Below, one piece after another: positions 3,801-58,234 of a DNA stretch of 64,000 nt (positions are counted from its first letter, which is position 1; every line of letters begins with the position of its first letter). Under the pieces are notes generated by a model. It saw nothing but the letters and a program-made list of their open reading frames with translations. It did no database searches and was not told the origin of the DNA. The DNA lies in NCBI GenBank assembly GCA_002269645.1, contig NIVC01000875.1, positions 1-64,000 on the forward strand. The letters run 5' to 3'. Made by a program: the position numbers and the translations under genes. The stretch comes from Macrostomum lignano. Taxonomy: Eukaryota.

Positions 3801-6800
3801 AGTTATCCCAAATCCCAAATGATAGTCACAGAAAAATCCCATCTCAGTTATCCCAAATCCAAAAGACAGTTACAGAAAAATCCCATCTCAGTTACCCAAA
3901 TCCCAAATGGCAGTCACAGAAAAATCCCATCTCAGTTATCTCAAATCCCAAACGACAGTCACAGAAAAATCCCATCTCAGTTATCCCAAATCCCAAACGA
4001 CAGCCACAGAAAAATCCCATCTCAGTTACCCAAATCCCAAACGACAGCCACAGAAAAATCCCATCTCAGTTATCCCAAATCCCAAACGGCAGTCACAGAA
4101 AAATCCTATCTCAATTATCCCACAGAACCGCAGCTCACCTTGAGAATTGGCACCACAATTTTGCCCAGAATCCTCTCAGGCAGCGCTCCGGCATGCCGCA
4201 TCAGCCGGTCTAAGCAGGTGGCCATCAGCTCCATGCAGACCCACACCTCCGACGGGAATATGAACACGCCGAAGCAGCGAACAATGTGCCGGCAATCGTG
4301 ACACTTGGTCACCACCTCCAGGTCCATGATCACTCGCTTGTTCTCCTCTGCATTATTGCCCGTCCGCCGCATCACCTTCACGGCCATCTGGCGGCCGCAC
4401 TGCTTCAGCCTGGCCCGCGACACCACGCCGCAGATGCCCTGGCCAAGCTCGCATTCCAGCTGGATGTCCTCACGCTGGCAGCTGATGGTGGGCCCGCCGG
4501 GGTCAAGGGTCAGCTGGCCGCTCTTCTTCAGCATCTCCTCGTAGCGCCGGTGCACCTGGTCCTCTCTGCAGGTTGAGCGTGGGTTGGCGGCGATAGATGC
4601 GAAATTAATAACAAAGACATGGAGAGAGAGTTAGTAGCTTAATAAAGACTGTTTGTTGAACGACGACCCAGTGAAGCTGAGCAGAACAAAGACCCAATGG
4701 TGATAGCAATGGTAGCTGAATAAAGACTCGATGATAGCAATGGTACCTGAACAAAGACCCAGTGGTGATAGCAATAGTAGCTGAACAAAGACCCGGTGGT
4801 GATAGCAATGGTAGCTGAACAAAGACCCAGTGGTGATAGCAATAGTAGCTGAACAAAGACCCGGTGGTGATAGCAATAGTAGCTGAACAAAGACCCGGTG
4901 GTGATAGCAATGGTACCTGAACAAAGACCCGGTGGTGATAGCAATGGTAGCTGAACAAGACCCAGTGGTGATAGCAATGGTAGCTGAACAAAGACCCGGT
5001 GGTGATAGCAATGGTAGCTGAACAAGACCCAGTGGTCAAAGCAATGGTAGCTGAACAAAGACCCGAAGATTAGCAGTGGTAGCTGAACAAAGACCCGGTG
5101 GTGATAGCAATGGTAGCTGAACAAAGACCCGGTGGTGATAGCAATGGTAGCTGAACAAGACCCAGTGGTGATAGCAATGGTAGCTGAACAAAGACCCGGT
5201 GGTGATAGCAATGGTAGCTGAACAAGACCCAGTGGTCAAAGCAATGGTAGCTGAACAAAGACCCGAAGATTAGCAGTGGTAGCTGAACAAAGACCCGGTG
5301 GTGATAGCAATGGTAGCTGAACAAAGACCCGGTGGTGATAGCAATGGTAGCTGAACAAGACCCAGTGGTGATAGCAATGGTAGCTGAACAAAGACCCGGT
5401 GGTGATAGCAATGGTAGCTGAACAAGACCCAGTGGTCAAAGCAATGGTAGCTGAACAAAGACCCGAAGATTAGCAATGGTAGCTGAACAAAGACCCGGTG
5501 GTGATAGGAATGGTAGCTGAACAAAGACCCGGTGGTAATAGCAATGGTAGCTGAACAAAGACCCGAAGATTAGCAATGGTAGCTGAACAAAGACCCGGTG
5601 GTAATAGCAATGGTAGCTGAACAAAGACCTGAACACAAAAATCAGAATTGAAGATTTTAAACCAATACAAAGCCAGTTAGAATGCACTATACAATACGCG
5701 AGGCATGAGACACGGAGAGAGGCGAGGCGTCATTCAGAGAAAGTGCATCTCAACAGGAGCCGTGGCAGCATCGATACTGACTCGAAGGCAAGAGACCCTG
5801 AGGCACCGTAATCAGTCGCGCACTAAGAGCCTGGCTCTCGTCACGCGCTATGCAACTCGGGAGGATAAACGCACTAGCAGGGTATTAATTTCTCCCCCCC
5901 ACGTACCCCTCCTGCAGCTGCCTAATTGCAAACCTAGCTGAGAGGGGGGGCGTGACCGAGGCTTCAGCCTTGAGGCCTAATCGCAAAGTCTCACCCCCTT
6001 TTCCATCTCTCACGGCAACCCCTACCGAGCAGGGATGCCTTACTGTTTTATCATCATCATCGTGGAATCTAATTATTGCGAGGCCGTACTAAGACTTTCC
6101 TGATTGAGACTATTTTTATATTCTCAAGTTAAGTACTAGCGACGCTTGAATAAGTCAGCTTCTCAACTGTTGCCTGAGACTTCATGCAAGCCAGATGAGT
6201 TCAGTACACTCGATTATCTCTCTTCATCGCTCTTATCTCACTCTCAGCGTCACTTTTATCTCACTCTCTGCATCGATCTTATCTCACTCTCTGCATCGAT
6301 CTTATCTCACTCTCAGCGTCGTTCTTATCTCACCCTCTGCATCGCTCTTATCTCACTCTCAGCGTCACTCTTATCTCACTCTCTGCATCGCTCTTATCTC
6401 ACTCTCTGCATCGTTCTTATCTCACTCTCTGCATCGCTCTTATCTCTCTCTCTGCATCGCTCTTATCTCACTCTCTGCATCGCTCTTATCTCTCTCTCTG
6501 CATCGCTCTTATCTCACTCTCTGCATCGCTCTTATCTCTCTCTCTGCATCGCTCTTATCTCACTCTCTGCATCGATCTTATCTCACTCTCTGCATCGCTC
6601 TTATCTCACTCTCTGCATCGCTCTTATCTCACTCTCTGCATCGCTCTTATCTCACTCTCAGCGTCAATCTTATCTCACTCTCTGCATCGCTCTTATCTCA
6701 CTCTCTGCATCGCTCTTATCTCACTCTCTGCATCGCTCTTATCTCACTCTCTGCATCGCTCTTATCTCACTCTCTGCGTCAATCTTATCTCACTCTCTGC

Positions 6801-10197: not shown

Positions 10198-11186
10198 ATG
10201 AAACTATATCAGCAGGTTTCAATTAAGTTATTTAATGCATCCTTTCAAACTGTGTTGGAATCGTTTGCTTCTCATGAAGGTAAGTTAGTAATTGGTAAAC
10301 TGACTTAACCAATTTTAAGACTCACAAAATTCCAAAAAATCTATTTAATTACAATTTAAAGTTGCTGAGTTTATTTACACATTTTCTGCCAAAGCTTTTA
10401 TATAAAATAAAACATCAATTTGAATTTGAAATAAAGACCATCATTTTAATTATTTTTTCATTTTAGTAATTGAAGAGCTGTGCACCATGGCAGAGTCAAC
10501 ATTTTCATCAAAACTCAATCCAAAATTGATTGCAAATGCAGCAAGTGAGTGATTTTGCTGGTTTGAAAGAAAAAAAAACATTTTAGAAGTTATTTTACAT
10601 AGAAATTCTGAATCAATTAAAGATAGTTCTTATATTAATATAATAAAAATTTTCAGGCAAATGCCAAGTTGACAAGGCTGAGATGCAGCGCCTCATTGAC
10701 TGCCTGTCACTGCTGCTCGAGACCTCAGCCAGGCTTTCCTGTGAGACCAAAGAGGTCGAAGAGTGCCTCTTGCTGTGTGGGGCGCCTGCAGGTGTAGCCT
10801 CAGGAATTGCTGCTCACACAGCAGCCAATCAAGCTGCTCTGCGAGATCACTTGGCTCACCTGGATTCGGCTGCTCTAGCCCTGTCACCATGCCAACCAAC
10901 AGCACCTTCAATGAGATCGTCTAGGCCCACCAGCCAACAGTCTCTGCCAGCATTTCACTCCCTTCGCTGGCGATTCGATGTTGAAATTGCGTCTCGTTGT
11001 CTGGGCGATCAAATTGTCCCCCTGCTGAAACTGCACCTGGTCACGCAATCAGCTGACGGCCGCCGCACCAGCCACTGGCTGCAGACTGACCCCAACAATC
11101 TGCGACATCTTGTTGAGAGTCTGGAGGCTGCTCTAACTGCTGGACAGACGAATCACGCTCAGCGAATCGTGCGCTACGTGAAGTAG
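10198..11186 (+). CDS. COMMD2: COMM domain-containing protein 2; exons 10198-10279, 10467-10544, 10657-11186 (229 aa)
   Basis: COMM domain WRFDVEIASR...LQTDPNNLRHLVESLEAAL...TNHAQRIVRYVK matches the COMMD2 C-terminus. Two upstream GT-AG exons are in phase (VIEELC...LNPKLIANAASK). Confidence 0.88.
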
Positions 11187-12945: not shown

Positions 12946-13612
12946 TTATACGACTGAATTCTCCATTTGTTGCAATAGCCAACGAGTCTCTGCTTTTAAA
13001 TAAGTTATCTCTTCTTTCATTCCAATGTCAGTCTGTCTGTGAGAGCAAGAGAGCACCGATGTTCTTCTGCCAACTCTGAGCTGCCGGTTGCCCCTTTTAC
13101 CAGCCGCCGCCCCCGCGTCCGCCCCGCGATTGAAGCCGCCGCCCCCGCCGTATCCGCCCCTGCCGCCGAAGCTGTTATTGTAGCCACCAATGCGGCCAGG
13201 CGGGCCCGAGTAGCCCCTGGCAAAGCCGCGACCTCCGCCTCGGCCGCCGCGGAAGTTGCCATGGTGATGGTTACGGGGCACGTGCCCGAAAGTCTCCGTG
13301 TTGAGCTTGCGCTCCTCTCGCCAATTCGGCCTGCCACCTCCGCTGCCTCCGCCGCTGCCCCTGTCCACAGCCTCCGAGCTGATGTTGTCGAAGAACGACT
13401 TGGACTTGTTGTAGCCGCCAGCCTCGTCGCCTTCATTCGACGCGGCGTCGCCGGCTGCGTTGCCGCCGCCGCTGTCGTTGCCGCCGTCCTCGCCGGCGTC
13501 GGAATCGGCGCCAGACACGGAGATTTTCTGCAACTCCTTAGCCAGGTCTTCGTTCGCCGATTCGAAATCGTAGTCGCCTTCGAACTTCACGCCGCTGCCT
13601 GAGCGGGGCGGC

Positions 13613-13643
<31 letters not shown>

Positions 13644-15240
13644 CAAAGCTCTGCGGAGGCATCGGCCGTCCGATTCCGCCGCCGTGGCCGCCGCGATAGC
13701 CGATGGGCCGACGGAAGCCGCCGCCTATTGGCATCGGGCCGCCGCCACCGCGGAAGCCACCGCCTCCACCGCCGCGGAAGCCTCCGCCACCGCCGCCGCC
13801 GCCACGGAAGCCACCGCCGCCACGGAAGCCACTGCCGCCGCCGTCACGGAAGCCACCGCCGCCGCCGTCACGGAAGCCACCGCCGCTGCCGCCGTCACGG
13901 AAGCCGCCACCGCCTCCGCGGCCTCGACGAAACTCGACTGAGCCCATCAAATGCTGCTGCTGCTGCTGCTGGTGCTGATTCTGGTAGCGAGTTGGGCCAG
14001 TGTCAGGCCGGCGATTCTCAAAGTTGCCACCGCCGCTGTATTCGCCGCGCTGATGCTGCTGAGGCTGGCGTTGCTGCTGCTGCTGCTGCTGCTGGTCCTG
14101 ACGTCCCCGCTGATGTCCACCTGGTGGCGCACTTGATGGCTGCTGCTGCTGGTGCTGCTGCTGGTGCATCATCTGCTGATTGTTCATTGGCGGAGGCGGG
14201 CCTTGGTTAGACCGGGCATTTTGCTGCTGCTGCTGGCGGGGCATCGGCTGCGGAGGCGGCGGTTGGCTTACAATGCTAGCCATTGACGGTGGCGGCAGCT
14301 GCGGTGGACCGCCCGAGCTGCCGAACTGCTCGAAATCAGATTTATAAAAATAGGTTGCTTTAGTTCGAAGATGGAATTTGGAACTTTAGAAATTCAAAGT
14401 TTGTTGAAGAGTTTTAGCAATTAGCCCAAGGGAACATTGGGGCCGGACTATTCGAGGATATCATGGGGCTTTAAGACTTAACAATATTTATTTAGAAACT
14501 TTGGAGAGCTTTGTTGTAAGCTTGGTGATATTGCGATTGCGATATAAGCTTGGGGATTAAATTAAGGATTTTGGGGAGCTGAGGTATCAGCTTGGGGACA
14601 TGGGGAGCTGGGGGATTGACTTGGGGATATTGGGGACCTGGGGGATTAACTTAGAATTTGTTTAAAGTGGTTTAGCTCCTCAGCGACAACTCACCATTTT
14701 GCTGATGCCTAACGGTCCACCCGAGCCCATAGGCGGCTGCGACATTGGGGGCGGCCTTCGGGCCGATGCCATCGGTCCAGCAGCATTGGAGAACTGCTGC
14801 TGCTGCTGCTGATGCTGATGCTGAGGCGGCAGCGGCGGCGGAGGCATGGAAGTCTGCGGTGGCACACCCGGGGAGGTGACATTCGGCGGCTGTGTGGGCA
14901 TCCGCGGGTAGCCGGGCGGCGGCGGTGGCGTGCTGGGCTTGGTGTCAATTTTCACAATTGCCGGGTCCTGCTGCACCAGACCGCCGCTGGGCTTGGGCGG
15001 CTCGCACACGTGCAAGTCGCTGATGTCGCTGCCACGAAAGATGATGTACTCGTACACCTCGTCCCGGGGCGGCACCGGCCTATCGCACGGCCGGTCCTCG
15101 GTGCCAAATGACTTCACTTTCGACAGGGCCACAGTGGACTCCACCGTGTCGATGGTGTACAGGGTACCCTCGTATCGGATTGCCGCCTTGGAGATTAGGC
15201 TAATCCGGCTGCCCAGGTAAGGCATGGCTCCCTGAGACAT
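12946..15240 (-). CDS. LSM14: LSM14/RAP55/Trailer hitch P-body protein; exons 15240-14695 and ~14325(14328)-12946; 3' end uncertain
   Basis: N-terminal Lsm14 domain ([24 protein letters not shown]...VKSFGTEDR...[14 protein letters not shown]), DFDF-like box ([12 protein letters not shown]), FFD box ([12 protein letters not shown]), TFG box ([11 protein letters not shown]) and RGG repeats. Donor ATG|GTGAGT at 14695/14694. Confidence 0.92.
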
Positions 15241-16205: not shown

Positions 16206-17891
16206 GTTCCTATACAATATAGGTAGGTAGGTATATAGTCTTAATTTTTAGTATATTGGATTAGATAAACAAAAACAATATAACAGATTTCAATAGCTGT
16301 AAGGACCCCAATATTACTATATTCCTACAGTTCTTGTAACCATTTTTGACAAAAAGTATAGGAAATAAATTAATTTGAATCGGTAAGATAACCTAAAACT
16401 TAAGACTGTAAATTAAGGTATAAACTTAAATAAATACTTGATTGCCCTTGTAAAATTTCATTTCTATTTATCTTACAAAGAGTAACAATACTAAATCACT
16501 ACTTAAAGTATTACTACTAAACTTTTTACATTAATGTAAGTTAGAATTTAGTATTGTTTTATTGACTTTATTAGGTATAATTTATAAGTTTTTAAATCTA
16601 TGATACAGTTTACCTAAGTATCTTTGTTTTACTCTACTTGTTTTTATTTTTTATTCATAACTATGGCTATAAGATCAACAGAATGTGACTGCAATTACTA
16701 TAAATCTGCAGTTATAGCCATAAGAGCAGCTATTTACTATGTAGCTGCCATAGGCACTTATTTTACCATATTTGCTATAGGATCCCATTGCTATAACTGT
16801 AACTATAGCAAAACTATTTTGCAAGTTTACTTTTAGTCTAAGTTTAAATTGTAGTTGATATATAAATATATATTTAAAAATGTTTAAAAAATTATAAATA
16901 CAACTTGCAAGATAAATAATAAAGCTAAAACAAAAAATGATGAAATTTATATACTTCATTTTCTTAAAAATTGCAAATAATAAAATCCATTCATAAGATT
17001 TGCAACCCAGTCAGATAAAATAATTGCAAATTGCAATCTAGTCTTATAGCAACTATAAGCAACTGATATTTTTATAACTAAATGGTACATATAATATAGA
17101 CTTTTAAATATGGTAAGGGTTGGACAAAATCTGAATCTTGATTGTCAAGTTCTTGGCATTTTTAAAAATCTCAATCTTGGTTTCAAAATCTCAAAAAAGT
17201 CAATATTTGCAATTGACTATTTGTAATCATGATATTGTGGTTATACCAATCTTCCAATATGTTTCCTAATATTATTTCAAATTTGAATCAGTGTTGCAAT
17301 ATAATGCCATGGTAGAAAATGATATCTATGGCCAAAAATGATAGGAAATAATATTCGAAAATCTTCTAGCCTTTAGCTCTAATCTACTGCTCTATCTATT
17401 ACCCTATCTATTGCTTTATTTATCTATTTACCATTCTAGCCATTGCTCTATTTACTTATCTATAAAGTGCTATACCTAGTGCTTAGAGGTAAAGGTACTA
17501 TGTTGTGGCAGCAATTCAAACTTGAAAATAAAATCACAAAACAAACAGGAAACTTGCTAATTTTATCATACTTATATTTGATTTATATCAAGTTATTAAC
17601 AAGCTCAATATCAATGAATCATTGTTTTTCATTATCATTGCATTTACAAATAATATTATTAATATTTAAAAAATAATAGTGTAAATAGGCCTACTAGATG
17701 CAAATTAGGCTTAATCTAAAACCTCAATGATCTTCAAGTGTAGATCTTATGTCTAAAAAACTTTAAAAAATTGATATTGTTTAACCCTTAAAATATAGCA
17801 TACTAATATATTCTAATAAAAAAATTGCAAGGCTATTTATTTGCTGTCTTTGGATATGAGAAATAAATAAATAAATTAGTAATGAACACAA

Positions 17892-18135
17892 AGTTTATTT
17901 AGACTATATTAGACCTTCTTTAATGATTTAAAATATAATTCTAATAGGGTAAGGGTTCTATTAGAATTTCCCATAGACAAATGGGTGCCCTTGAATTTAG
18001 TAATCGAAATTTAGTAACCGTGAATTTAGTACCGCTTGAATTTAGTACCGCTCGAATTTAGTACCGCTTGATTGAATTTAGTACCGCTTGAATTTAGTAC
18101 CGCTTGAATTTAGTAATGCCTGAATTTAGTAACGC
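17892..18135. repeat. Left direct repeat (A1): palindrome plus 17-bp GAATTTAGTACCGCTT(G) iterations
   Basis: Near-identical to 20295-20555. Confidence 0.92.
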
Positions 18136-18541
18136 AACAAATTGTGCAGCTGAGATATTCCTTATGTATTTGTATAATATGAAGGAAAGGAAGTGAATAT
18201 GAAGTGAAGGAAAGTTCTATTGTTCTGCAACTTCACTATATATATATTACTATTCATTGTAATATTATGACTTGTATTATTAACATTGCCCGAAATATTT
18301 GTTCATGGCAATGACCTCCGGACAATGACCGGCCATTTTCTGGAGGTAAAAAAACAAGACTGGACAACAATACCATAGGCGAAAAAAGTAACACGAAGCG
18401 TGAAATTCTTATATTTATTGAAGTCCAACAAAAATGTTCCAACAATAACACTGCTTAGTCAATTGAGTGCAAGTCTAACCTATGGTCATGTTCTCATCAC
18501 GACAGCAGGAGAAAGTCCAGAAAATACGACGGTTGAGTCCA

Positions 18542-19998
18542 TTACTCAAATTTGCAACCATTGAATGAACAGTTGTGGAAACTGTACCTGACCGACGGAT
18601 TGTCATGACTGATGCCGGTGATCTGCACGGAAGACGACACAGGTACTGGCACCGGTGAACTCTCACGCAATGGAGTCGCAACAGCTTGTGAAGAACCATT
18701 CAAATCAAGTGCCATAGAAACAGCCTCACTGGTAGACTGCAGCGAGCGATCACGGCGCTTGGACAGGTAACGGCGAGTTGTCCTCTCAGAAACCTGACCG
18801 GTTATCGACATGATGTCAGCCAGGTTGTACCCAGCAGCCTCTAGATCAGCAATCCTGCTCACTCTACAACAGAAATAAAGTATTGCATAGAAAATATGCA
18901 ACTGGTTTAAAGCAATATGAAGAAAAAGGCTTACCGAATGCAATGATTCGTGTACATCTTGGACAAACCGGCCTTCTCGCTCAAGTTTCGCATGAAACGC
19001 AGGAAGTAGTTCTCCCCGCGATTCTGCTTTGTTGAGAACATAGGCTGTCCATTGGAATCCGTGTTGGATAGTGGACGCGGGAACAGATGGTTGTCCTTGG
19101 TTGTTGGAGGTAGCAGTTGTAGATATCTCCTCACTTTGGCCGTGTCGTAGATCCGAGCTTGTTTGTTGTCCGGCCTGGCCTTCGCCTTCACAGGATCGGC
19201 TGACTTATTCTTCGTTGGCAGAGCAGGAAGACAGTAGTACTCCTTGCCGTCAGAATCCGTGTGCAATTCAAGCGAGTCCCTTTGTCTCAGGAACTTCAGA
19301 TGCTCCTGGCCACGCTCTCCAAAGGAGTAAAGAACATAGAACAGAAATTTAGCCTGCTCGATTTCAGCCGTAGTCCCTTCAAAGTAGCACCGCAACTTCT
19401 GCATGTCGCCTTCTTCAATTGGTTCATACTGCCTGGTGCAGCCACCATCTCGATGGAAATCACGAACCTTGACACGCAGCATCTCGTTGCAGGAATTGAA
19501 TTCCTCACCACCGATTATATCGACAGGCAGCTTCAGAACCATGCGTAGGAAACGCTGAATTCCAGCCCGGATACAGATGAGAGAGGCCGGCGAGTAGAAC
19601 GAGCCATTCTGTTTCTTCAGCTTGAAGTAGAAGTACCGAAGATATTGGTTCAATGTAGGATTGTTGACATGCTGAATGTTGCGCAGATTCTCCCCTTCCA
19701 GGAAGTCTCGAAAACGTTGGCCATGCTGGTACATCTGCTTCCGAGTATCCTCAGGCAGACTCTGGATCTCGATTCTGTCCATCTCGGAAACGTCTATCTT
19801 TTCATCTCCATCGATCATTGGCAGCCCAGTATCAGCTGGACCATTTTGGACATACTTTAGGAACGCATCGAAATCTTCGTCGTGCCGATCAACGGCAGAG
19901 GATTCCGAGAGGAAGTTCAGTTCATCCTGCGTGATGTTGCCGAGGTCCTCACACGGGAGGTTACCCCAATTAATATAATGTATTATCGGGTCGCTCAT
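18542..19998 (-). CDS. Tyrosine recombinase, Crypton/DUF3504-like; exons 19998-18935 and 18863-18542 (461 aa), 71-nt intron
   Basis: Motifs YFYFKLKKQNGSFYSPASLICIRAGIQRFL, FGERGQEH (catalytic R), TKN, YTNHCIR (HxxR) and, after splicing, ITGQVSERTTRRY (catalytic Y). Intron CG|GTAAG...TGTAG|A keeps the frame. Confidence 0.88.
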
Positions 19999-20294
19999 GA
20001 TGGACAGAAAACTCTTGAATCAACAGGTTTGGACAGACTACTTACTGCCTGGGAATCCCTCACACAAACCCCTTCACCCCCACTGAAAGTTTTGCCATAG
20101 ACATTTCAACCCTCCATTCAATCAATAGGATTGTCATTGCCATGAACTCTCCACGCCTTTTGGCTTTCGTGCCATAGACGTTTGTGCCTCCTCCTTCTGG
20201 GCCACTTCGATTCGTGCCATAGATATTTCCTGCAATGAAGTTAACTGGAAGAGAGAACTCCAGGCAACGGCCAAAGCCACGAGCGGCGCTAGCT

Positions 20295-20555
20295 AGTTTA
20301 TTTAGACTATATTAGACCTTCTTTAATGATTTAAAATATAATTCTAATAGGGTTCTATTAGAATTTCCCATAGACAAATGGGTGCCCTTGAATTTAGTAA
20401 TCGAAATTTAGTAACCGTGAATTTACTACCGCTTGAATTTAGTACCGCTCGAATTTAGTACCGCTCGAATTTAGTACCGCTTGATTGAATTTAGTACCGC
20501 TTGAATTTAGTACCGCTTGAATTTAGTACCGCTTGAATTTAGTACCGCTTGAATT
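20295..20555. repeat. Right direct repeat (A2)
   Basis: Near-identical to 17892-18135; lacks 6 bp in the palindrome spacer and differs in iteration number. Confidence 0.92.
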
Positions 20556-20825
20556 TTGAAATTTGAAAGCAAAGAAAATTAAGCAAATGTAGGTCCCATA
20601 TATTGAAATTAAAAATTTGAAGTAATTAATGAAGGGAAAAATTAGATTCTATAGTTTTAAGTCATTAACTTAGATAATCCAATGTATCATATTTAATCAG
20701 TTTTAGGATGTCTTGGTACACATGCACATACATGTGCAACAGTTGGCCAAGTCGGCCAATTTGGCCAACCAAGGAAGTGGCAAAAATGCCCACCCAAAAA
20801 AATACCCTAAGTAATAGTACTAAGT

Positions 20826-20892
20826 AGCATTTTGACTTAATAAGACAGTCATAGTTACTCCAGCTGTTTCCCAAAGTTGCGTTAATTTTGCC
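20826..20892 (-). other. Degenerate 28S rRNA-like segment (second, more diverged copy)
   Basis: Reverse complement reads GGGAAACAGCTGGAGTAACTATGACTGTCTTATTAAGTCAAAATGC. Confidence 0.6.
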
Positions 20893-21437
20893 TCAGGTTT
20901 TTTATATGTAAATCACATTCTTGGCCACAAACTACATTGCATTTTTGTTAAAACTAAGTTGCATGGCTGACCAAATTTTGGAGGTTGCGCATGTATATTG
21001 GTGCATATATCTGAGGTATTTAGAAATTAAAATATATTGATAAAAACACTTTTAAACAAGTTAAACATATTAACAGTTTTCTGCATCAATTAAAATCTTT
21101 TGAACTATGCAAGAATGTATTTTAAATATTTTAATGCTCTTTTTTAAGTTCATTGGTATATTCTTTTGGAGCATATCAATTAATCTTCTATATTATTATT
21201 CTCATTTGTTACCAAAGTGGCTATTATAGAAATGGCTGTTACTGAAGTGGTTGTTACTAAACTGGACTTTTACCAAAAATATTGATTTTTTTCCAATAAT
21301 GAATAAGCTTTGCATGCTTGTTATATCCCCCTATTGCAGCACATGGCTTAAGTACGCCAGACGCCTACACAACCTGCGCCACGCTGTGAAATGACTTACC
21401 TGTGAAAGAAACCCTAAAGCAAAATTAATGCAGTTTT

Positions 21438-21501
21438 GGGTAAACGGCAGGAGTAACTATGACTGTCTTATCAAGCCTAAATGCCTCGGCATCTAATTAG
21501 T
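21438..21501 (+). other. Degenerate 28S rRNA-like segment (helices 69-71; R2/I-PpoI target region); not a functional rRNA gene
   Basis: GGGTAAACGGCAGGAGTAACTATGACTGTCTTATCAAGCCTAAATGCCTCGGCATCTAATTAGT versus the conserved eukaryotic GGGTAAACGGCGGGAGTAACTATGACTCTCTTAAGGTAGCCAAATGCCTCGTCATCTAATTAGT. Confidence 0.8.
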
Positions 21502-21556
21502 ACTATGCCCATATTCTATGGGGTGGCATTTTTGCAACTTACCCCTGGTCCACCAC

Positions 21557-23321
21557 CAGTGTGACCACCAAAAATTACAAGAAATAATTAGCGCAGCACG
21601 AAAAAAATAGCGCAGGCAAAATCAAACAACGAACACCATTTATACATCGTAAAATTAAGTAAAAAGTTTGAATTTATACAACCATAAAGATGTTGAGTTA
21701 TTCATAGTTAATTTGGAGTTTAAAACTTAAAATAGGGCCTATTTCGATTTAATGAGACAGAAGCAGACAGGCTGCTTTAGCGAAGAAAAATGTACATGTA
21801 AAACACTCCCGGCGATGAAGTAAAAAATATTGCAATGGTCACTGCGATGGGAAGTAGTAAATTGATTCTCGACTCTATTCTTCTACTTGCGCTTTTTGGG
21901 AGTGGGTGCGTTTAAGCCACTGCCGCCGGTCTTGCTGTTGCTGCTGGAACTCATCCGCTTGCGAAGCTGAGCCTCGGACTTTTCTGCTTCCAGAAGGATT
22001 TCCCAGGCTTTTCTACGCGCCTCGTCAATTTTGCGCTGCTCAGCCTGCACCTGTTCCGCATTCCTTCGCCGCTCTCGCTCCTCCTCGTCAGCCTTTTCGC
22101 GTTCAGCCTGGGCACGCTGCATAGAATCGAACTGCTCTTGGATTCGTGCCATTGCTGCTTCGTTTCTTTTTGCACGAGCTCGTGCATCGGCCTTTGCTTT
22201 AGCTTCGAAGCCGTCAGCTACGAGGGCTGGCCCAATCGCAACTGTTGATGATCGCCAGCTGTTGGCCTTAAGCCACACTTTGATAGCCAGAAGCGAGTCG
22301 AGTGTAAAATCAGACAGTTTATTCCTTTGCTTCGTAAGAAGCGTGCCGATCCACTTGATGACGCGCTCGCTGTCCGCATTTCCGTGAGGGATACAGCAAG
22401 CAGCGCGACCAAGCGCCGTTAGATGTGGAAAGATGTCGGTGGACAAAGTGGCCCAGAATTCTTCGGGTGTCATGTCTGCAGATACATTAAAGTCATCAGG
22501 GCAGCAGGCGCGAAGCTTTGCTACCTCCAAACGAAGATCGTCAAGTCGTTCAGTAGGAACCACTGTCGTGAGGGCCCTAGCAACGCGCAAAACGCTTGTG
22601 TCGATGTTAAATTCTTCAGACACTGACAGCAAATACTTAGGATCGACAAACTGCAGAGCACGAAGCAGTTTGTTGTGCAGTGGCAAATAGGAAACAAGAC
22701 GACTGGTCAACTCGACGTAAAACTTTCGAGCAGCCACGAAAAAGCTTAGCTTGTTCATTTCGGTTAACGTAGTCAGTGTCTTGCGTGTATTATTTCCGAT
22801 TACCAACTCTTTATTCGAAACTTGATTTGCCCGGTCCTTGGCCTTTTCGGCAATCTCGCCAACAGTTGAGCAGTCCTGCACCACCTCGCCGCGAAGAAAG
22901 CTCAGCAAAATATCGCTGAGAAGTTCATCAAGACTTGCAGCAAGATGATGGACTTGGGTCGACTCAAGCTGAAACATCTTCTCAAACTTGTCGCAACGCG
23001 GCAAGACTTGCTCTAGGAATTGTAGGCGAGCAAGCACGTTGTTGTTCAGGGCCTGCTTGATTCGCCGTGCTCTTACGTTTTCCAAGAAGTCAGGCGTAGC
23101 ATTTAAAATTTGAAGCATTTAAAAGAAATGGGGGGGAGACAAACTCAATGTTTTGAAGCATTTTTTGGATACTTCATTTTGTGTATTTCATTTAAAACGA
23201 CAAAATTACAATGTAGAGCAAAATAGCGCAGATACATCAAATAGCGCAGAAAATAGAGCAATAGCGCAGGCAAGCAAAAATAGCGCAGCTGCGCTAAAAT
23301 AGCGCAGTGGTGGTCACACTG
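21557..23321 (-). mobile_element. Internally deleted hAT DNA transposon (1765 bp)
   Basis: Perfect 14-bp TIRs CAGTGTGACCACCA (21557-21570 and 23308-23321), perfect 8-bp TSD TCCACCAC (21549-21556 and 23322-23329), and subterminal TAGCGCAG repeats at both ends. Confidence 0.95.
21883..23118 (-). CDS. Truncated hAT transposase (C-terminal part with dimerization domain, charged tail and NLS-like PKKRK)
   Basis: Uninterrupted 411-aa ORF with FWATL...FPHL...CCIPHGNADSERV...KQRNKLSDFTLDSLLAIK, typical of the hAT C-terminal dimerization domain. Confidence 0.85.
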   Translation of the reverse strand: MLQILNATPDFLENVRARRIKQALNNNVLARLQFLEQVLPRCDKFEKMFQLESTQVHHLAASLDELLSDILLSFLRGEVVQDCSTVGEIAEKAKDRANQVSNKELVIGNNTRKTLTTLTEMNKLSFFVAARKFYVELTSRLVSYLPLHNKLLRALQFVDPKYLLSVSEEFNIDTSVLRVARALTTVVPTERLDDLRLEVAKLRACCPDDFNVSADMTPEEFWATLSTDIFPHLTALGRAACCIPHGNADSERVIKWIGTLLTKQRNKLSDFTLDSLLAIKVWLKANSWRSSTVAIGPALVADGFEAKAKADARARAKRNEAAMARIQEQFDSMQRAQAEREKADEEERERRRNAEQVQAEQRKIDEARRKAWEILLEAEKSEAQLRKRMSSSSNSKTGGSGLNAPTPKKRK

Positions 23322-31527: not shown

Positions 31528-31674
31528 TAAAGAGGATGCGAAGAACTTAAGAGTCAAAATAAAGCCCGAAAATATTTTGGAGCCAAATATCTCCCGTTAT
31601 GTCTAAAACCGACCACTTTACCATTTGGGGATCGATCTCTACGGGGAAGAAGGGATAAATAGGAATAAGACGGT

Positions 31675-34295
31675 AAGACAGTAAGACACTAAGACAGTAA
31701 GACATTAAGACACTAAGACAGTAAGACATTAAGACAGTAAGACATTAAGACACTAAGACAGTAAGACATTAAGACACTAAGACACTAAGACACCAAAACA
31801 GAGGACACTAAGACAGTAAGACAGTAAGACAGTAAGACAGTAAGACAGTAAGACACTAAGACAGTAAGACATTAAGACACTAAGACAGTAAGACATTAAG
31901 ACACTAAGACACTAAGACACCAAAACAATAAGACCCTAAGACACTAAGACACCAAAACAGTAAGACACTAAGACACTAAGACACCAAAACAGTAAGACCC
32001 TAAGACACTAAGACACTAAGACACTAAGACACTAAGACACTAAGACACTAAGACACTAAGACACTAAGACACTAAGACACTAAGACAGTAAGACACTAAG
32101 ACACTAAGACACTAAGACACCAAAACAGCAAGACACCAAGACACTAAGACAGTAAGACAAGACACAAAGACACTAAGACACTAAGAAACTAAGACACTAG
32201 GACAATAAGACACTAAGACAGTAAGACACTAAGAAACTAAGACACTAAGACACTAAGAAACTAAGACACTAGGACACTAAGACAGTAAGACAGTAAGACA
32301 CTAAGACACTAAGAAACTAAGACACTAAGAAACTAAGAAACTAAGACACTAAGACACTAGGACACTAAGACAGTAAGACAGTAAGACAGTAAGACAGTAA
32401 GACACTAAGACACTAAGACACCAAAACAATAAGACCCTAAGACACTAAGACACCAAAACAGTAAGACCCTAAGACACTAAGACAGTAAAACACTAAGACA
32501 GTAAGACACTAAGACACTAAGACACTAAGACACTAAGACACTAAGACACTAAGACACCAAAACAGCAAGACACCAAGACACTAAGACAGTAAGACAAGAC
32601 ACAAAGACACTAAGACACTAAGAAACTAAGACACTAGGACAATAAGACACTAAGACAGTAAGACACTAAGACACTAAGACACTAAGACACTAAGACACTA
32701 AGACACTAAGACACTAAGAAACTAAGACACTAGGACACTAAGACAGTAAGACACTAAGACACTAAGACACTAAGACACTAGGACAATAAGACACTAAGAC
32801 ACTAAGACACTAAGAAACTAAGAAACTAAGACACTAGGACACTAAGACACTAGGACACTAAGACAGTAAGTCAGTAAGACACTAAGACAGTAAGACACTA
32901 AGACACTAAGACACTAAGACACCAAAACAGCAAGACACCAAGACACTAAGACAGTAAGACAAGACACAAAGACACTAAGACACTAAGAAACTAAGACACT
33001 AGGACAATAAGACACTAAGACAGTAAGACACTAAGAAACTAAGACACTAAGACACTAAGAAACTAAGACACTAGGACACTAAGACAGTAAGACAGTAAGA
33101 CACTAAGACACTAAGAAACTAAGACACTAAGAAACTAAGAAACTAAGACACTAAGACACTAGGACACTAAGACAGTAAGACAGTAAGACAGTAAGACAGT
33201 AAGACACTAAGACACTAAGACACCAAAACAATAAGACCCTAAGACACTAAGACACCAAAACAGTAAGACCCTAAGACACTAAGACAGTAAAACACTAAGA
33301 CAGTAAGACACTAAGACACTAAGACACTAAGACACTAAGACACTAAGACACTAAGACACCAAAACAGCAAGACACCAAGACACTAAGACAGTAAGACAAG
33401 ACACAAAGACACTAAGACACTAAGAAACTAAGACACTAGGACAATAAGACACTAAGACAGTAAGACACTAAGACACTAAGACACTAAGACACTAAGACAC
33501 TAAGACACTAAGACACTAAGAAACTAAGACACTAGGACACTAAGACAGTAAGACACTAAGACACTAAGACACTAAGACACTAGGACAATAAGACACTAAG
33601 ACACTAAGACACTAAGAAACTAAGAAACTAAGACACTAGGACACTAAGACACTAGGACACTAAGACAGTAAGTCAGTAAGACAGTAAGACAGTAAGACAC
33701 TAAGACACTAAGACACCAAAACAATAAGACCCTAAGACACTAAGACACCAAAACAGTAAGACCCTAAGACACTAAGACAGTAAAACACTAAGACAGTAAG
33801 ACACTAAGACACTAAGACACTAAGACACTAAGACACTAAGACACTAAGACACTAAGAAACTAAGACACTAGGAACTAAGACAGTAAGACAGTAAGACACT
33901 AAGACACTAAGACACTAAGACACTAAGACACTAAGACACTAAGAAACTAAGACACTAGGACACTAAGACAGTAAGACAGTAAGACACTAAGACACTAAGA
34001 CACTAGGACAATAAGACACTAAGACAGTAAGACAGTAAGACAGTAAGACAGTAAGACACTAAGACACTAAGACACTAAGACACTAAGACAGTAAGACACG
34101 ACACAAAGACACTAAGACACTAAAACACCAAATTAGTAAGACCCTAAGACACTAAGACAGTAAGACAGTAAGACACTAAGACACTAAGACAGTAAGACAG
34201 TAAGACACTAAGACACTAAGACAGTAAGACAGTAAGACACTAAGACACTAAGACACTAAGACACTAAGACACTAAGACACTAAGGCACTAAGACA
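31675..34295. repeat. 2.6-kb 8-bp satellite (TAAGACAC/TAAGACAG)n with an internal 802-bp duplication
   Basis: Direct inspection; diagnostic variant CAAAACAGCAAGACACC at 32121/32923 and 32558/33360. Confidence 0.97.
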
Positions 34296-34659
34296 CAACG
34301 CATTTTTACAGTTTAAAAGGTGATGCATCGATGCAGAAGCAATGAAGTCAAGGATTGTTTACAAAAACATGCAATACTATGATTCAGGCCATGTGACACG
34401 CAAAACACTTGATGCAACGCAAATCGCCACAACACCAAACAGGGGAGAATGTTGAAATGACAAAACGAATTTCCGTTCTGAGTGCTGCAAGCCTTCAAAA
34501 GATTTAGCGCACTTGTTTATTTAGCTGCCGATCTCGTGCCAGAGACGCTGGGGTCAAAGTGTCAGGACTGCAATAAATGGCTGAATTTCTCATTTTAGAA
34601 TTGGACTGTACAATATAGCAGAGCTGCAGCTTGAAGGGCTGGAAGCCTAGCTGGCATGG

Positions 34660-36285
34660 TGTCCAGCTGGAGTCAGCATTTAGCACAGTGGGGGGTCCAG
34701 CTGGAGTCAGCATTTAGCACAGCGGGGGGGGGGGTCCAGCTGGAGTCAGCATTTAGCACAGCGGGGGGTCCAGTTGGAGTCAGCATTTAGCACAGCAGGG
34801 TCCAGCTGGAGTCAGCATTTAGCACAGCAGGGTCCAGCTGGAGTCAGCATTTAGCACAGCAGGGTCCAGCTGGAGTCAGCATTTAGCACAGCGGGGGGTC
34901 CAGCTGGAGTCAGCATTTAGCACAGCAGGGTCCAGCTGGAGTCAGCATTTAGCACAGCGGGGGGGGGTCCAGCTGGAGTCAGCATTTAGCACAGCGGGGG
35001 GTCCAGTTGGAGTCAACATTTAGCACAGCAGGGTCCAGCTGGAGTCAGCATTTAGCACAGCGGGGGGTCCAGTTGGAGTCAGCATTTAGCACAGCAGGGT
35101 CCAGCTGGAGTCAGCATTTAGCACAGCGGGGGTCCAGCTGGAGTCAGCATTTAGCACAGCGGGGGGGGTCCAGCTGGAGTCAGCATTTAGCACAGCGGGG
35201 GGTCCAGTTGGAGTCAGCATTTAGCACAGCAGGGTCCAGCTGGAGTCAGCATTTAGCACAGCGGGGGGGGGTCCAGCTGGAGTCAGCATTTAGCACAGCG
35301 GGGGGGGTCCAGCTGGAGTCAGCATTTAGCACAGCGGGGGGTCCAGTTGGAGTCAGCATTTAGCACAGCAGGGTCCAGCTGGAGTCAGCATTTAGCACAG
35401 CGGGGGGGGTCCAGCTGGAGTCAGCATTTAGCACAGCGGGGGGTCCAGTTGGAGTCAGCATTTAGCACAGCAGGGTCCAGCTGGAGTCAGCATTTAGCAC
35501 AGCGGGGGGTCCAGTTGGAGTCAGCATTTAGCACAGCAGGGTCCAGCTGGAGTCAGCATTTAGCACAGCGGGGGTCCAGCTGGAGTCAGCATTTAGCACA
35601 GCAGGGTCCAGCTGGAGTCAGCATTTAGCACAGCGGGGGTCCAGCTGGAGTCAGCATTTAGCACAGCAGGGTCCAGCTGGAGTCAGCATTTAGCACAGCA
35701 GGGTCCAGCTGGAGTCAGCATTTAGCACAGCGGGGGTCCAGCTGGAGTCAGCATTTAGCACAGCAGGGTCCAGCTGGAGTCAGCATTTAGCACAGCAGGG
35801 TCCAGCTGGAGTCAGCATTTAGCACAGCGGGGGGGGGGTCCAGCTGGAGTCAGCATTTAGCACAGCGGGGGGTCCAGTTGGAGTCAGCATTTAGCACAGC
35901 AGGGTCCAGCTGGAGTCAGCATTTAGCACAGCGGGGGGTCCAGTTGGAGTCAGCATTTAGCACAGCAGGGTCCAGCTGGAGTCAGCATTTAGCACAGCGG
36001 GGGTCCAGCTGGAGTCAGCATTTAGCACAGCAGGGTCCAGCTGGAGTCAGCATTTAGTACAGCGGGGGGTCCAGTTGGAGTCAGCATTTAGCACAGCAGG
36101 GTCCAGCTGGAGTCAGCATTTAGCACAGCAGGGTCCAGCTGGAGTCAGCATTTAGCACAGCGGGGGTCCAGCTGGAGTCAGCATTTAGCACAGCAGGGTC
36201 CAGCTGGAGTCAGCATTTAGCACAGCAGGGTCCAGCTGGAGTCAGCATTTAGTACAGCGGGGTCTAGCTGGGGTCAGCCAGTTAC
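34660..36285. repeat. Minisatellite, ~32-38-bp unit GGGTCCAGCTGGAGTCAGCATTTAGCACAGC plus a variable G-run
   Basis: About 48 copies; the reverse complement is related to the 30987 array. Confidence 0.97.
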
Positions 36286-43028: not shown

Positions 43029-44807
43029 ATGACAACCAAAAGCTACTTGAGCAGTGCAGCAGACATTGCCCGCCTGATGTCAACAAAGCGAGTATTTTTA
43101 TTCGACTGCGATGGCGTCATCTGGAATGAGAACACCCTGGTGCCAGGTGCCAAGGACCTGCTAACTCGCCTGAAGCAACTCGGCAGGCAGGTGTTTCTTG
43201 TCACCAACAACAGCTCCAAGTCAAGGGCGCAATATGTGGCAAAGTGTCGCAAGCTGGAGCTGCCGATTGAAGAGGCCGACATCGTGTGCACCGCCGCCGT
43301 GGCTGCTGGGTACATCAGCAAGCTGAAGCTGCCCGGGGTTACCTATGTTATTGGAAGTCAAGGATTGCAGGTAGGTGAATTTTCGTTTAAACTATAAGCA
43401 CTTTATATGCTTATAGTTTTCCAATCATAACGTTATCATAGCACAAATAGTTGATTTTACAATTTTACAACCCACAACCCATGCTTTGTTCATTCAGGAT
43501 GAATTGGAATTGCACGGCATCAACTGCTGCGGATTTCGCGAGGATGACGACACCGCGGTGCACGATCAGGTGAGTTAGTTAAGTAATCTGTATATTGGTA
43601 GTGTAAGTTCTGTAATAATCCCAAATATTGGGATTATTTATCCTCTGATCCTCTAATTATCCTCTGATCGATGGAGGTCCAAACAATTTAAACTCAGCAA
43701 CCGCCCGTCATTGACTCATCCACCACCCGTCATTGACTCATCAACCGTCCATCATTGACTCATCAACCGTCCGTCTTGACTCATCAACCACCCGTCATTG
43801 ACTCATCAAACGCCCGTCATTGATTCATCAACCACCCGTCATTGACTCATCAAACGCCCGTCATTGACTCATCAACCACCCGTCATTGACTCATCAACCA
43901 CCCGTCATTGACTCATCAACCGCCCGTCATTGACTCATCGACCGTCCGTCATTGACTCATCAACCGTCCGTCATTGACTCATCAACCACCCGTCATTGAC
44001 TCATCAGCCACCCGTCATTGACTCATCAACCGCCCGTCATTGACTCATCAGCCACCCGTCATTGACTCATCAACCGCCCGTCATTGACTCATCAGCCACC
44101 CGTCATTGACTCATCAACCGCCCGTCATTGACTCATCAACCGCCCGTCATTGACTCATCAACCGTCCGTCATTGACTCATCAACCACCCGTCATTGACTC
44201 ATCAACCGCCCGTCATTGACTCATCAACCGCCCGTCATTGACTCATCAACCGTCCGTCACCCAGGGCGTTGAGCAATTCGGCGACGCCCCGCTTCGCAAC
44301 GACGTCTCCTGCGTTCTGCTGGCCCTGGACACCAGATTCAACTACCTGAAGCTGCTCAAAGCCTGCAGCTACGTCTCAGCCGGCGCCCTGTTCCTCGGCA
44401 GTAACGAGGACGCCTTCCTGCCATCTGGACAGCCGTCGCCAACTGTGCCAGTGCGCCTGCCGGGCACCGGAGCCATGCTCTCGGCTCTGTGCGTTGCCAC
44501 CCAGCAGCAGCCGGCAGCCGTGATGGGGAAGCCGCACCGGCCCATGCTGGACTATGCCGTGCAGCTCATGACGGAGGCCCGACAGGACCAGCAGCCGCCC
44601 CCGCTGTCCCAGTGGCTTATGGTCGGGGATCGTCTCGACACGGACATCGCATTCGGTCGTCGGCACGGCATGGACACAGTATGTGTGATGACCGGCTGCA
44701 CCAAACCGGAGGATCTGCTAGACTTAAGCGAAGCAGACTCAGAGCTCAAGCCTAACTGTGCGGCCGAGTCGGTGGCCGACTTGTTGCCTCATCTGGCCGA
44801 GAATTGA
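43029..44807 (+). CDS. PGP: HAD-family phosphoglycolate/pyridoxal phosphatase (PGP/PDXP-like); exons 43029-43370, 43498-43569, 44265-44807 (318 aa)
   Basis: Motif I FDCDGV, FLVTNNSSKSR, PGTGAM, GKP and MVGDRLDTDI..G; phase-0 introns. Confidence 0.9.
43700..44260. repeat. Minisatellite, 22-bp unit ACCCGTCATTGACTCATCAACC (PGP intron 2)
   Basis: About 25 copies ending at the splice acceptor. Confidence 0.96.
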
Positions 44808-57948: not shown

Positions 57949-58234
57949 GCAGCTGAGTGGCTCACATGTCAAACATTTTGTGCAGTATTGAATTGGAGTG
58001 CAGCGAAAATTAAATAGATAAGTAAACAATGAATGGCTCTAAATATTCAAAGAGCATCGCCCAGGAGTTCATCACAGATGCCTTTCTTTGGTTGTCACTT
58101 CAATCACATCCTTTGAGCTTCGACACTGATGGTGAAACCACACAGCAGCTTACGCGTGCTTTATAAGTTTAGAAAAAATATTTTGCAAGTTCTTTTTCGG
58201 TTAAATGTCAATTAAACGCTTGGTAAAGACTGCT

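What the first reader, a model, noticed from the sequence alone, without database searches (positions are those of the whole stretch)
17892..20555. Tyrosine-recombinase gene boxed between two long direct repeats: candidate excisable or circle-derived eukaryotic YR element
A 461-aa Crypton/DUF3504-type recombinase sits between two near-identical ~240-260 bp repeats (17892-18135 and 20295-20555; period 2403 bp). Each repeat has a palindrome, a CCATAGAC motif and a run of 17-bp GAATTTAGTACCGCTTG iterations. Described Cryptons usually have only short terminal direct repeats. An A-YR-A layout is what integration of a circular [A+YR] molecule into a resident A site would leave, or a 1.1-copy concatemer. 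The iterations resemble iteron or arm-site arrays of prokaryotic YR systems. The structure is seen directly; the mechanism is inferred.
Basis: partly seen in the sequence, partly recalled or inferred. Interest (0 to 1): 0.85.

Follow-up and report, generated by a model that had tools for sequence, protein, structure and literature searches.

The report
Crypton recombinase boxed by site repeats
A small mobile-DNA gene for a Cre-like recombinase lies between two copies of a 250-bp sequence that looks like its own docking site; relatives suggest this layout arises when such elements insert next to each other's sites, which would give animal Crypton transposons recombination sites that can be tested.

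Summary
Two direct repeats, A-left (17892-18135) and A-right (20295-20555), flank one intact two-exon gene on the minus strand. It encodes a 461-aa Cre-like tyrosine recombinase with R229, H352, R355 and Y387 intact.

Corrections: the iteration period is 16 bp, not 17. Pfam DUF3504 is passed only by relatives, not by this protein.

A is not a random repeat. It holds a 10-6-10 core-like palindrome, a GTCTATGG box that recurs three times upstream of the gene and in relatives, and a half-site. That half-site matches the palindromic sites upstream of recombinase genes in distant relatives (rank 4 of 127,972 window positions).

In those relatives I could resolve the unit ends. Each unit reads ACAATG, palindromic site, gene, ACAATG. 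The same unit occurs in several flanking contexts, and units are stacked head-to-tail, so a gene can look boxed by two sites (L006).

Best reading (0.55): one Crypton-type unit next to a second copy of its site, excisable as a 2.4-kb circle. No circle, empty site or crossover point has been shown for the window. An LTR-like reading is disfavoured, and domestication is not excluded.

Verdict: a new variant of a known kind; interest 0.6.

The parts
20295..20555 (-). A-right: 261-bp structured repeat lying upstream of the recombinase gene (which is on the minus strand). By analogy with the relatives, this is the unit's own site.
   Evidence: site position relative to the gene as in relatives
17892..18135 (-). 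A-left: 244-bp second copy, downstream of the gene. Read as a resident/solo site or as the start of a neighbouring unit.
   Evidence: no recombinase-like sequence follows it
20340..20365 (.). Core-like palindrome AATTCTAATA-GGGTTC-TATTAGAATT (10-6-10) in A-right.
17937..17968 (.). The same palindrome in A-left, with the spacer doubled to 12 bp (GGGTAAGGGTTC).
20367..20375 (-). GTCTATGGG box (CCCATAGAC on the + strand) in A-right; the twin in A-left is at 17970-17978. It resembles the inner edge CATTGTCTAT of the relatives' sites.
20382..20396 (-). Half-site TAAATTCAAGGGCAC on the gene strand; the twin is at 17985-17999. It matches the arm next to the centre of the relatives' palindromic sites.
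   Evidence: A PWM built only from relatives ranks it 4th of 127,972 window positions
20405..20556 (.). 16-bp tandem array, 9.3 copies (AATTTAGTACCGCTTG); the units are iterated derivatives of the half-site.
18008..18135 (.). 16-bp tandem array, 7.8 copies, in A-left.
18935..19998 (-). Recombinase exon 1 (aa 1-354 plus 2 nt); holds R229, K263, H352 and the first two bases of the R355 codon.
18864..18934 (-). 71-nt GT..AG intron, phase 2, splitting the R355 codon. L001 has an intron at the same position.
18542..18863 (-). Recombinase exon 2 including the stop codon; holds Q378 (at the His-II position), Y387 and the C-terminal FHNCSFNGCKFE tail.
20095..20223 (-). Three further (G)TCTATGGC boxes upstream of the ATG (20095-20101, 20172-20178, 20217-20223). 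The box / inverted repeat / box / ATG arrangement is conserved in L001.
   Evidence: (D4)
20133..20147 (.). GTCATTGCCATGAAC, the upstream arm of an inverted repeat that brackets the gene.
   Evidence: the L001 equivalent is at 101-116 / 1948-1963
18301..18347 (.). Downstream conserved block: the inverted-repeat arm GTTCATGGCAATGAC (18301-18315) plus the palindrome 18314-18347 with two GGTCATTG boxes. It is about 77% conserved with the 3' end of the L001 contig.
18414..18419 (-). AATAAA polyadenylation-type signal, 123 nt after the stop codon.
   Evidence: read from the sequence

Best explanation
The locus is one compact Crypton-type DNA transposon unit. It consists of a structured attachment site (A-right), a short promoter region and a single two-exon gene for a Cre-like tyrosine recombinase. 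It lies directly next to a second copy of the same site (A-left).

The second A is either the resident site into which a circular [A + gene] molecule integrated, or the 5' site of a neighbouring unit that is now missing. Either way, two sites in direct orientation make the 2.40-kb segment excisable by the recombinase as a circle that carries one A and leaves one A behind. Re-integration would be the reverse reaction, at an A or at a short crossover sequence.

Shown:
- the repeats and their fine structure;
- the intact gene and its catalytic residues;
- the Cre-like fold of the predicted model;
- a sequence match between A and the sites of relatives;
- in relatives, unit ends at ACAATG, several flanking contexts, and head-to-tail stacking.

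Inferred:
- that this copy is active;
- that a circle forms;
- which sub-site is the crossover point;
- that the 16-bp iterations are binding sites.
For: Gene and protein:
- One intact 461-aa ORF after splicing.
- A profile alignment to XerA lines up HxxR and G(Q)..Y.
- R229, H352, R355 and Y387 are present.
- The AlphaFold model matches Cre/Tre over both domains, Foldseek E 6.5e-9.
- Against the 69%-identical L001 gene, pS is 0.80 (saturated) and pN is 0.19, so the protein is under purifying selection.

A is tied to the gene:
- A PWM built only from the palindrome centres of relatives ranks A's TAAATTCAAGGGCAC 4th of 127,972 positions.
- The GTCTATGG box in A recurs three times upstream of the ATG. 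It also occurs in L001 and L003, upstream of the gene.
- The A copies are almost identical.

Family trait: 10 of 13 metagenomic relatives carry a large palindrome 100-300 nt upstream of the gene, with a conserved centre (GAGGGCGC-GTTA-GCGCCCGAG type).

Unit ends in relatives:
- L022 and L006 share a 97%-identical block that starts and ends at ACAATG, with unrelated flanks.
- The L017-L020 unit ends at ACAATG and is followed by at least three different sequences.
- The L012, L021 and L006 unit-2 units are also bounded by ACAATG.

Stacking in relatives:
- L006 reads unit 0 | unit 1 | unit 2. Sites S1 and S2 are 91% identical and box YR1, while YR1 and YR2 are only 64% identical at nucleotide level.
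- L010 runs into an L006-type site, and L017 into an L012-type site.
Against: - There is only one copy in the window. No solo-A allele, empty site or circle junction is available.
- The crossover oligonucleotide of this clade was not found. The relatives' ACAATG is absent upstream of the gene.
- The informative relatives are only 30-35% identical and come from unidentified organisms.
- 160 nt (18136-18300) between the conserved 3' block and A-left is unassigned.
- The 12-bp spacer in A-left may have inactivated that copy.
- The His-II position is Gln in the whole close clade.
- The conserved intron and the purifying selection also fit a domesticated gene.
- The closest relatives L023 and L004 show ordinary TATA and CCAAT promoters, with no boxes in the upstream sequence available.
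- 16-bp arrays are unremarkable in a window that is about 26% minisatellite.
Confidence: 0.55

Rival explanations
1. LTR-like element: both A copies are integral terminal direct repeats of one 2.66-kb element and move together with it.
For: The inserted-looking block starts exactly at the beginning of one A and ends at the end of the other. The copies are nearly identical, as LTRs are at insertion.
Against: No reverse transcriptase or other replication function is present; the recombinase is the only ORF of the unit. In relatives the same unit seen in a second context has the site only at its 5' end and stops at ACAATG (L022 against L006). The apparent flanking pair in L006 belongs to two different units.
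Confidence: 0.1
2. An immobile or domesticated recombinase-derived host gene. Its old site, or a regulatory repeat, was duplicated by host processes such as unequal crossing-over or slippage in a minisatellite-prone genome. The recombinase played no part in the duplication.
For: - The intron position is conserved across the clade, and purifying selection is strong.
- His-II is replaced by Gln throughout the clade.
- There is a single copy in the window.
- The window is about 26% tandem arrays.
- L004 and L023 have ordinary-looking promoters.
Against: - The catalytic R-H-R-Y tetrad is intact, unlike the domesticated DUF3504 genes described in PMC3212892.
- No host domains are fused to it.
- The neighbourhood is transposon-rich, with a hAT fragment and a MITE-like inverted repeat.
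- A carries the family's half-site.
- The duplicated segment contains 102 bp of unique, non-tandem sequence and is almost identical between copies.
Confidence: 0.25
3. Assembly artefact: a circular or tandemly repeated 2.4-kb molecule was laid out as 1.1 copies, or an overlap was duplicated.
For: The period and the layout are what a 1.1-copy read-through would give.
Against: The two A copies differ by a 6-bp indel, a 16-bp unit and about six substitutions. The block is embedded in 64 kb of unrelated unique sequence on both sides. The same layout is seen independently in L006.
Confidence: 0.05

Closest known systems
Animal Cryptons (CryptonA group; Kojima & Jurka 2011, PMC3212892)
   Same: A YR-only DNA element with no RT or DDE gene. 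The protein has a QRICH1/DUF3504-type N-terminal part plus a tyrosine-recombinase catalytic domain. Relatives at 30-35% identity pass Pfam DUF3504.
   Different: That paper reports no terminal repeats of any kind in animal Cryptons and no C-terminal domain. Here a 244-261-bp structured repeat lies on both sides. Relatives carry ~100-bp palindromic sites, and the family shares a C-terminal F-x-N-C-x-F tail. The window protein itself is below all Pfam thresholds.
Classical Crypton integration model (Goodwin 2003; active CryptonF-1_cRei in Chlamydomonas, PMC9977147)
   Same: A short direct repeat at both unit ends acts as the crossover sequence. The ACAATG at both ends of the relatives' units fits this exactly. 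Circle excision and integration is the inferred cycle.
   Different: The crossover hexamer of the window clade is not identified. In the relatives the target is often the edge of another unit's site, which gives head-to-tail stacks. This is not described for CryptonF in the passages I read.
Integron integrase / attC cassette arrays
   Same: This is a resemblance in how it works only. A tyrosine recombinase, imperfect palindromic sites, and serial insertion of heterologous units at a site boundary produce arrays.
   Different: Here every unit carries its own recombinase gene. The hosts are eukaryotic. No attI/attC homology or single-strand folded-site evidence was tested. It is not a member.
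Cre/loxP and Flp/FRT
   Same: The predicted fold matches Cre over both domains. A contains an inverted-arm/6-bp-spacer element of the loxP/FRT kind (10-6-10).
   Different: Sequence identity is only 12-16%. The His-II/Trp position is Gln. It has not been shown that the 10-6-10 element is the crossover site.
DIRS / Ngaro / PAT tyrosine-recombinase retrotransposons
   Same: A YR gene associated with direct repeats.
   Different: There is no RT, RNase H or methyltransferase, the unit is only 2.4 kb, and there is no split A1-B1A2B2 repeat pattern.
Domesticated Crypton-derived genes (ZMYM2-4, QRICH1, KCTD1, KIAA1958)
   Same: A weak QRICH1-domain match, introns, and purifying selection.
   Different: Those genes lack the complete catalytic tetrad and carry host domains (PMC3212892). 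Here the tetrad is intact and no other domain is present.

Membership tests
Tyrosine recombinase superfamily (Cre/Int/Xer) | Catalytic R...HxxR...Y residues in order | tested here: met
   R229, H352, R355 and Y387. The profile alignment to XerA (5hxy) lines up HxxR and G(H/Q)..Y. The His-II position is Gln378.
Tyrosine recombinase superfamily (Cre/Int/Xer) | Two-domain fold: core-binding domain plus catalytic domain | tested here: met
   The model has mean pLDDT 64.5, with the core (residues 70-390) mostly above 70. Foldseek top hits are Tre/Cre, E 6.5e-9, over 337-377 aligned columns.
Tyrosine recombinase superfamily (Cre/Int/Xer) | Pfam PF00589 at its gathering score | tested here: not met
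   19.2 bits against a cut-off of 27.1. Relatives P0010, P0011 and P0014 pass.
Crypton (YR-only DNA transposon) | Encodes a tyrosine recombinase and no reverse transcriptase or DDE transposase | tested here: met
   Between the repeats there is one gene only. The other ORFs are short and overlap it. No RT or DDE hit.
Crypton (YR-only DNA transposon) | Short (4-6 bp) direct repeat at both termini, serving as crossover sequence | tested here: inconclusive
   Met in relatives: ACAATG at both ends of five units. Not identified in the window.
Crypton (YR-only DNA transposon) | Multiple copies in different genomic contexts (mobility) | not testable with these tools
   Only this window of the host genome is available, and it holds one copy. 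Relatives occur in several contexts.
CryptonA / DUF3504 clade | DUF3504-type (PF12012) recombinase domain | tested here: inconclusive
   No PF12012 hit for the window protein. Full-length homologues (E 1e-43 to 3e-61) pass PF12012.
CryptonA / DUF3504 clade | No terminal repeats, as described for animal Cryptons | tested here: not met
   244/261-bp direct repeats flank the gene. This is the point of difference from the description.
DIRS/Ngaro/PAT retrotransposons | RT/RNase H gene and split or inverted terminal repeats with an internal complementary region | tested here: not met
   No RT, and a 2.4-kb unit.
Domesticated DUF3504 genes (ZMYM/QRICH1/KCTD1/KIAA1958) | Loss of the catalytic tetrad and fusion to host domains | tested here: not met
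   The tetrad is intact, and there is no MYM or BTB domain.

The most novel reading that the evidence does not exclude
Cryptons of this DUF3504-related clade behave like self-encoding cassettes. Each ~2-kb unit carries a structured site that can be more conserved than its own recombinase gene. Units integrate at the crossover hexamer on the edge of a resident site. This builds arrays of heterologous recombinase units, a eukaryotic analogue of integron-style stacking. The window's A, with its iterated half-sites, would be a derived form of that site. Together with its 461-aa enzyme it would be a complete, animal-native site-specific recombination system.
Probability: 0.3. Interest if true: 0.8.

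Novelty: new variant of a known kind. Interest (0 to 1): 0.6.

Why it matters
Cryptons are among the least understood eukaryotic transposon classes. Their ends are described as hard to define, and no terminal repeats were found in the animal groups (PMC3212892).

Here the window and about a dozen relatives give concrete candidate cis-sites:
- a palindromic site with a conserved centre;
- a 6-bp crossover sequence at both unit ends in the relatives;
- in the window, a 250-bp site with a loxP-like core element and iterated half-sites.

This turns the Crypton mechanism into something testable with a reporter assay. It also suggests that these elements target each other's sites, and it offers small animal-derived recombinase/site pairs as possible tools.

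Tried and rejected
- Circular contigs: none of the 16 related contigs tested (L001-L016) has a terminal overlap.
- Other copies in the window: none of A, of the flanks or of the recombinase gene, so no paralogous empty site.
- Viral contigs: no relative.
- Bacterial and archaeal genomes: only one contaminant contig, L022, which proved useful.
- A second profile search of the 5.8-billion-protein set added one protein only.
- UniRef Macrostomum proteins have no contig on record. The P0010 contig had no DNA available.
- The relatives' ACAATG as the window's crossover site: two hits on the gene strand, none upstream of the gene, not above chance (24 per 128 kb).
- tRNA target: none.
- The bacterial promoter/terminator scan is irrelevant for a eukaryote.
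- Host identity: the LSM14 search shows only that the host is a metazoan with no close named relative. The closest named recombinase relatives are from Macrostomum lignano, at about 50% identity.
- DIRS-like and LTR-like readings were rejected; see the rival explanations.
- Literature searches found no description of Cryptons with long direct repeats or palindromic sites in the held library.
Full report
OBSERVATION

The two repeats are real. The repeat finder gives a 59-nt block at 100% identity (17892 and 20295, spacing 2403) and a 120-nt block at 98% (spacing 2397). The pairwise alignment shows about 102 nt of unique sequence that is identical except for a 6-bp indel. A tandem array follows, with period 16 bp rather than 17: 7.8 copies on the left and 9.3 on the right. 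The right array has one extra unit. The two distal units of the left array carry about six substitutions. A motifs occur nowhere else in the window, where 0 matches are expected.

Between the repeats, on the minus strand, lies one gene:
- exon 1, 19998..18935;
- a 71-nt GT..AG intron;
- exon 2, 18863..18542.

This gives 461 aa. tblastn finds no second copy in the 64 kb.

THE PROTEIN

Pfam gives only sub-threshold hits: Phage_integrase 19.2 bits, QRICH1 domain 19.2 bits, and no DUF3504. Three further results show that it is nevertheless a tyrosine recombinase:
- A profile of the protein and its ten homologues aligns to the archaeal XerA structure across HxxR and G(H/Q)..Y.
- R229, K263, H352, R355 and Y387 are in place. 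Gln378 sits at the second-His/Trp position.
- An AlphaFold model has mean pLDDT 64.5, with the core mostly above 70. It matches Tre/Cre over both domains, Foldseek E 6.5e-9.

The family is very large. A profile search finds 9,398 clusters (50% identity) at E <= 1e-3 and 630 at E <= 1e-30. Relatives at 30-35% identity pass Pfam DUF3504, QRICH1 and Phage_integrase. That is the signature of animal CryptonA elements and of their domesticated derivatives (PMC3212892).

The closest named relatives are Macrostomum lignano 'Tyr recombinase domain-containing' proteins, at about 50% identity. The best hit, at 71% over exon 1, is an unnamed Logan contig, L001. L001 has an intron at the same codon. Over the whole protein it is 69% identical, with pS 0.80 (saturated) and pN 0.19, so the protein is under purifying selection.

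THE SITE A

Reading the + strand, each A contains in order:
- an AT-rich leader;
- a palindrome AATTCTAATA-GGGTTC-TATTAGAATT (10-6-10) in the right copy, with the spacer doubled to GGGTAAGGGTTC in the left copy;
- CCCATAGAC;
- GTGCCCTTGAATTTA;
- the 16-mers, which are iterated derivatives of that last motif.

The box (GTCTATGG on the gene strand) recurs three more times between A-right and the ATG. It is also found upstream of the gene in L001 (twice) and in L003. An inverted repeat, GTCATTGCCATGAAC (20133-20147 and 18301-18315), brackets the gene. It is conserved in L001, as is a downstream palindrome with two GGTCATTG boxes. Synonymous sites between the window and L001 are saturated. These conserved non-coding blocks are therefore likely to be functional cis-elements.

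RELATIVES SHOW WHAT SUCH SITES ARE

A scan of metagenome contigs returned 12 loci with 30-35% identical, full-length, intronless homologues. One more came from a contaminant contig in a bacterial MAG (L022). Others came from Logan and ENA (L017-L021).

Ten of the thirteen metagenomic loci examined carry a large palindrome 100-300 nt upstream of the gene. Its centre is conserved, of the type GAGGGCGC-GTTA-GCGCCCGAG, and its arms contain CAATG/CATTG. Most loci have a smaller palindrome downstream.

I built a 15-nt weight matrix from 16 half-sites of these relatives only. It ranks A's TAAATTCAAGGGCAC, on the gene strand, 4th of 127,972 positions in the window. The chance that a given 250-bp segment holds a hit that good is roughly 1-2%. 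A therefore carries the family's half-site, and the 16-mers are copies of it.

UNIT ENDS IN THE RELATIVES

L022 and L006 share a 97%-identical block (L022 519-2462, L006 56-2154) with unrelated DNA outside it. The block begins and ends with ACAATG.

The unit of L017-L020 is identical in four sequencing runs. It begins ACAATG|palindrome and ends ...GATAACAATG|. It is then followed by at least three different sequences. The L012, L021 and L006 unit-2 units are bounded in the same way. The inner edge of the palindrome usually carries the inverted hexamer CATTGT.

These are therefore classical Crypton units with a 6-bp crossover repeat, as in the Goodwin model and the active Chlamydomonas CryptonF (PMC9977147). 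They additionally carry a structured site immediately inside the 5' end.

Units are stacked head-to-tail:
- L006 reads unit 0 | unit 1 | unit 2.
- L010 runs into an L006-type site.
- L017 runs into an L012-type site.

In L006 the two sites that box YR1 are 91% identical, while YR1 and YR2 are 56% identical in protein and 64% in DNA. L017 and L021 share a site at 92.6% identity against 69% for the coding sequence. So 'repeat - recombinase gene - repeat' recurs in a distant relative. There it results from two adjacent units, not from terminal repeats of one unit: in L022 the same unit ends at ACAATG with no site after it.

INTERPRETATION FOR THE WINDOW

By analogy, A-right (upstream of the gene) is the unit's own site. 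A-left is a second site, either the resident site used for integration or the start of a lost neighbour. Two direct sites make the 2.40-kb segment excisable as a circle.

Several things remain open:
- I could not identify the crossover sequence of this clade. ACAATG is not found upstream of the gene.
- There are candidates: the CATTTGTCTATGG box (compare GCATTGTCTATCTATG in L012), the 6-bp spacer of the palindrome, and ACAATT (18145->18140) directly before the A-left array. None has been tested.
- The 6-bp doubling of the spacer in A-left is unexplained.
- 160 nt (18136-18300) is unassigned.
- The 16-bp iterations may be binding sites. But 19 minisatellite arrays cover about 26% of this window, so expansion alone may explain them.

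RIVALS

Domestication or an immobile relic (0.25) fits the conserved intron, the purifying selection, Gln378 and the ordinary promoters of L004 and L023. It does not fit the intact tetrad, the lack of host domains, the nearly identical site copies or the transposon-rich surroundings (hAT fragment 21883-23118, MITE-like inverted repeat).

An LTR-like element (0.10) is disfavoured by L022 against L006 and by the lack of any replication gene.

An assembly artefact (0.05) is unlikely, because the copies differ by indels and substitutions.

COMPARISON AND NOVELTY

Kojima and Jurka state that no terminal repeats were found in animal Cryptons and that these have no C-terminal domain. [quoted passage not shown] Searches of the held library found no description of palindromic sites, long direct repeats or stacking for Cryptons.

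I therefore rate this a new variant of a known kind. The host is a metazoan with no close named relative. If it is a flatworm, as the Macrostomum hits suggest, that phylum is outside the six listed for animal Cryptons in 2011.

Noticed in passing
window, whole (e.g. 4680-5629, 31666-34296, 34661-36278, 58229-61577): 19 minisatellite arrays with periods of 8-117 bp cover about 16.4 kb, or 26% of the window. Several create long spurious ORFs.
   Followed up: partly
window 21883-23118 (-): A 411-aa ORF with a hAT-family C-terminal dimerisation domain (E 1.8e-6). It is a transposase fragment 1.3 kb from A-right.
   Followed up: partly
window 20775-20901 / 21409-21540: A MITE-like pair of inverted repeats (about 127 nt, 74-86% complementary) immediately beyond A-right.
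   Followed up: no
window 16484-16558: An isolated palindrome, AACAATACTAAAT...ATTTAGTATTGTT, that contains the iteration core GAATTTAGTA. This is the only exact copy outside A (0.19 expected). It may be a decayed solo site.
   Followed up: partly
window 18542-18577 (aa 450-461); also L006, P0004, P0010: A conserved C-terminal F-x-N-C-x-F-x-x-C-x-F tail across the recombinase family, although animal Cryptons are described as lacking a C-terminal domain.
   Followed up: no
window 18864-18934; L001 1312-1409: The intron splits the codon of the catalytic Arg of HxxR (phase 2). It is at the same position in L001, and this is implied in P0007 and P0008, whose called ORFs stop at HCIR.
   Followed up: partly
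L022 (CALGXJ010000114.1): A eukaryotic Crypton unit sits on a 2.6-kb contig binned into a 'Candidatus Kapabacteria' MAG. This is probably bin contamination.
   Followed up: no
L022 109-127 and 186-204: The left flank of the L022 unit holds two direct copies of CTCAAAATTCAAGGG, the same AAATTCAAGGG half-site as in the window's A.
   Followed up: no
window 12946-15240 (-), 10683-11186 (+), 44238-44807 (+): Host genes near the element: LSM14 (Sm domain plus an RGG/FDF-type region), a COMM-domain protein and a HAD-like hydrolase.
   Followed up: partly
L002 1449-1575: This relative has a different, C-terminal intron: the called ORF stops before a ...RFFENCNFQNCTFQF exon. Intron content therefore varies within the clade.
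   Followed up: no
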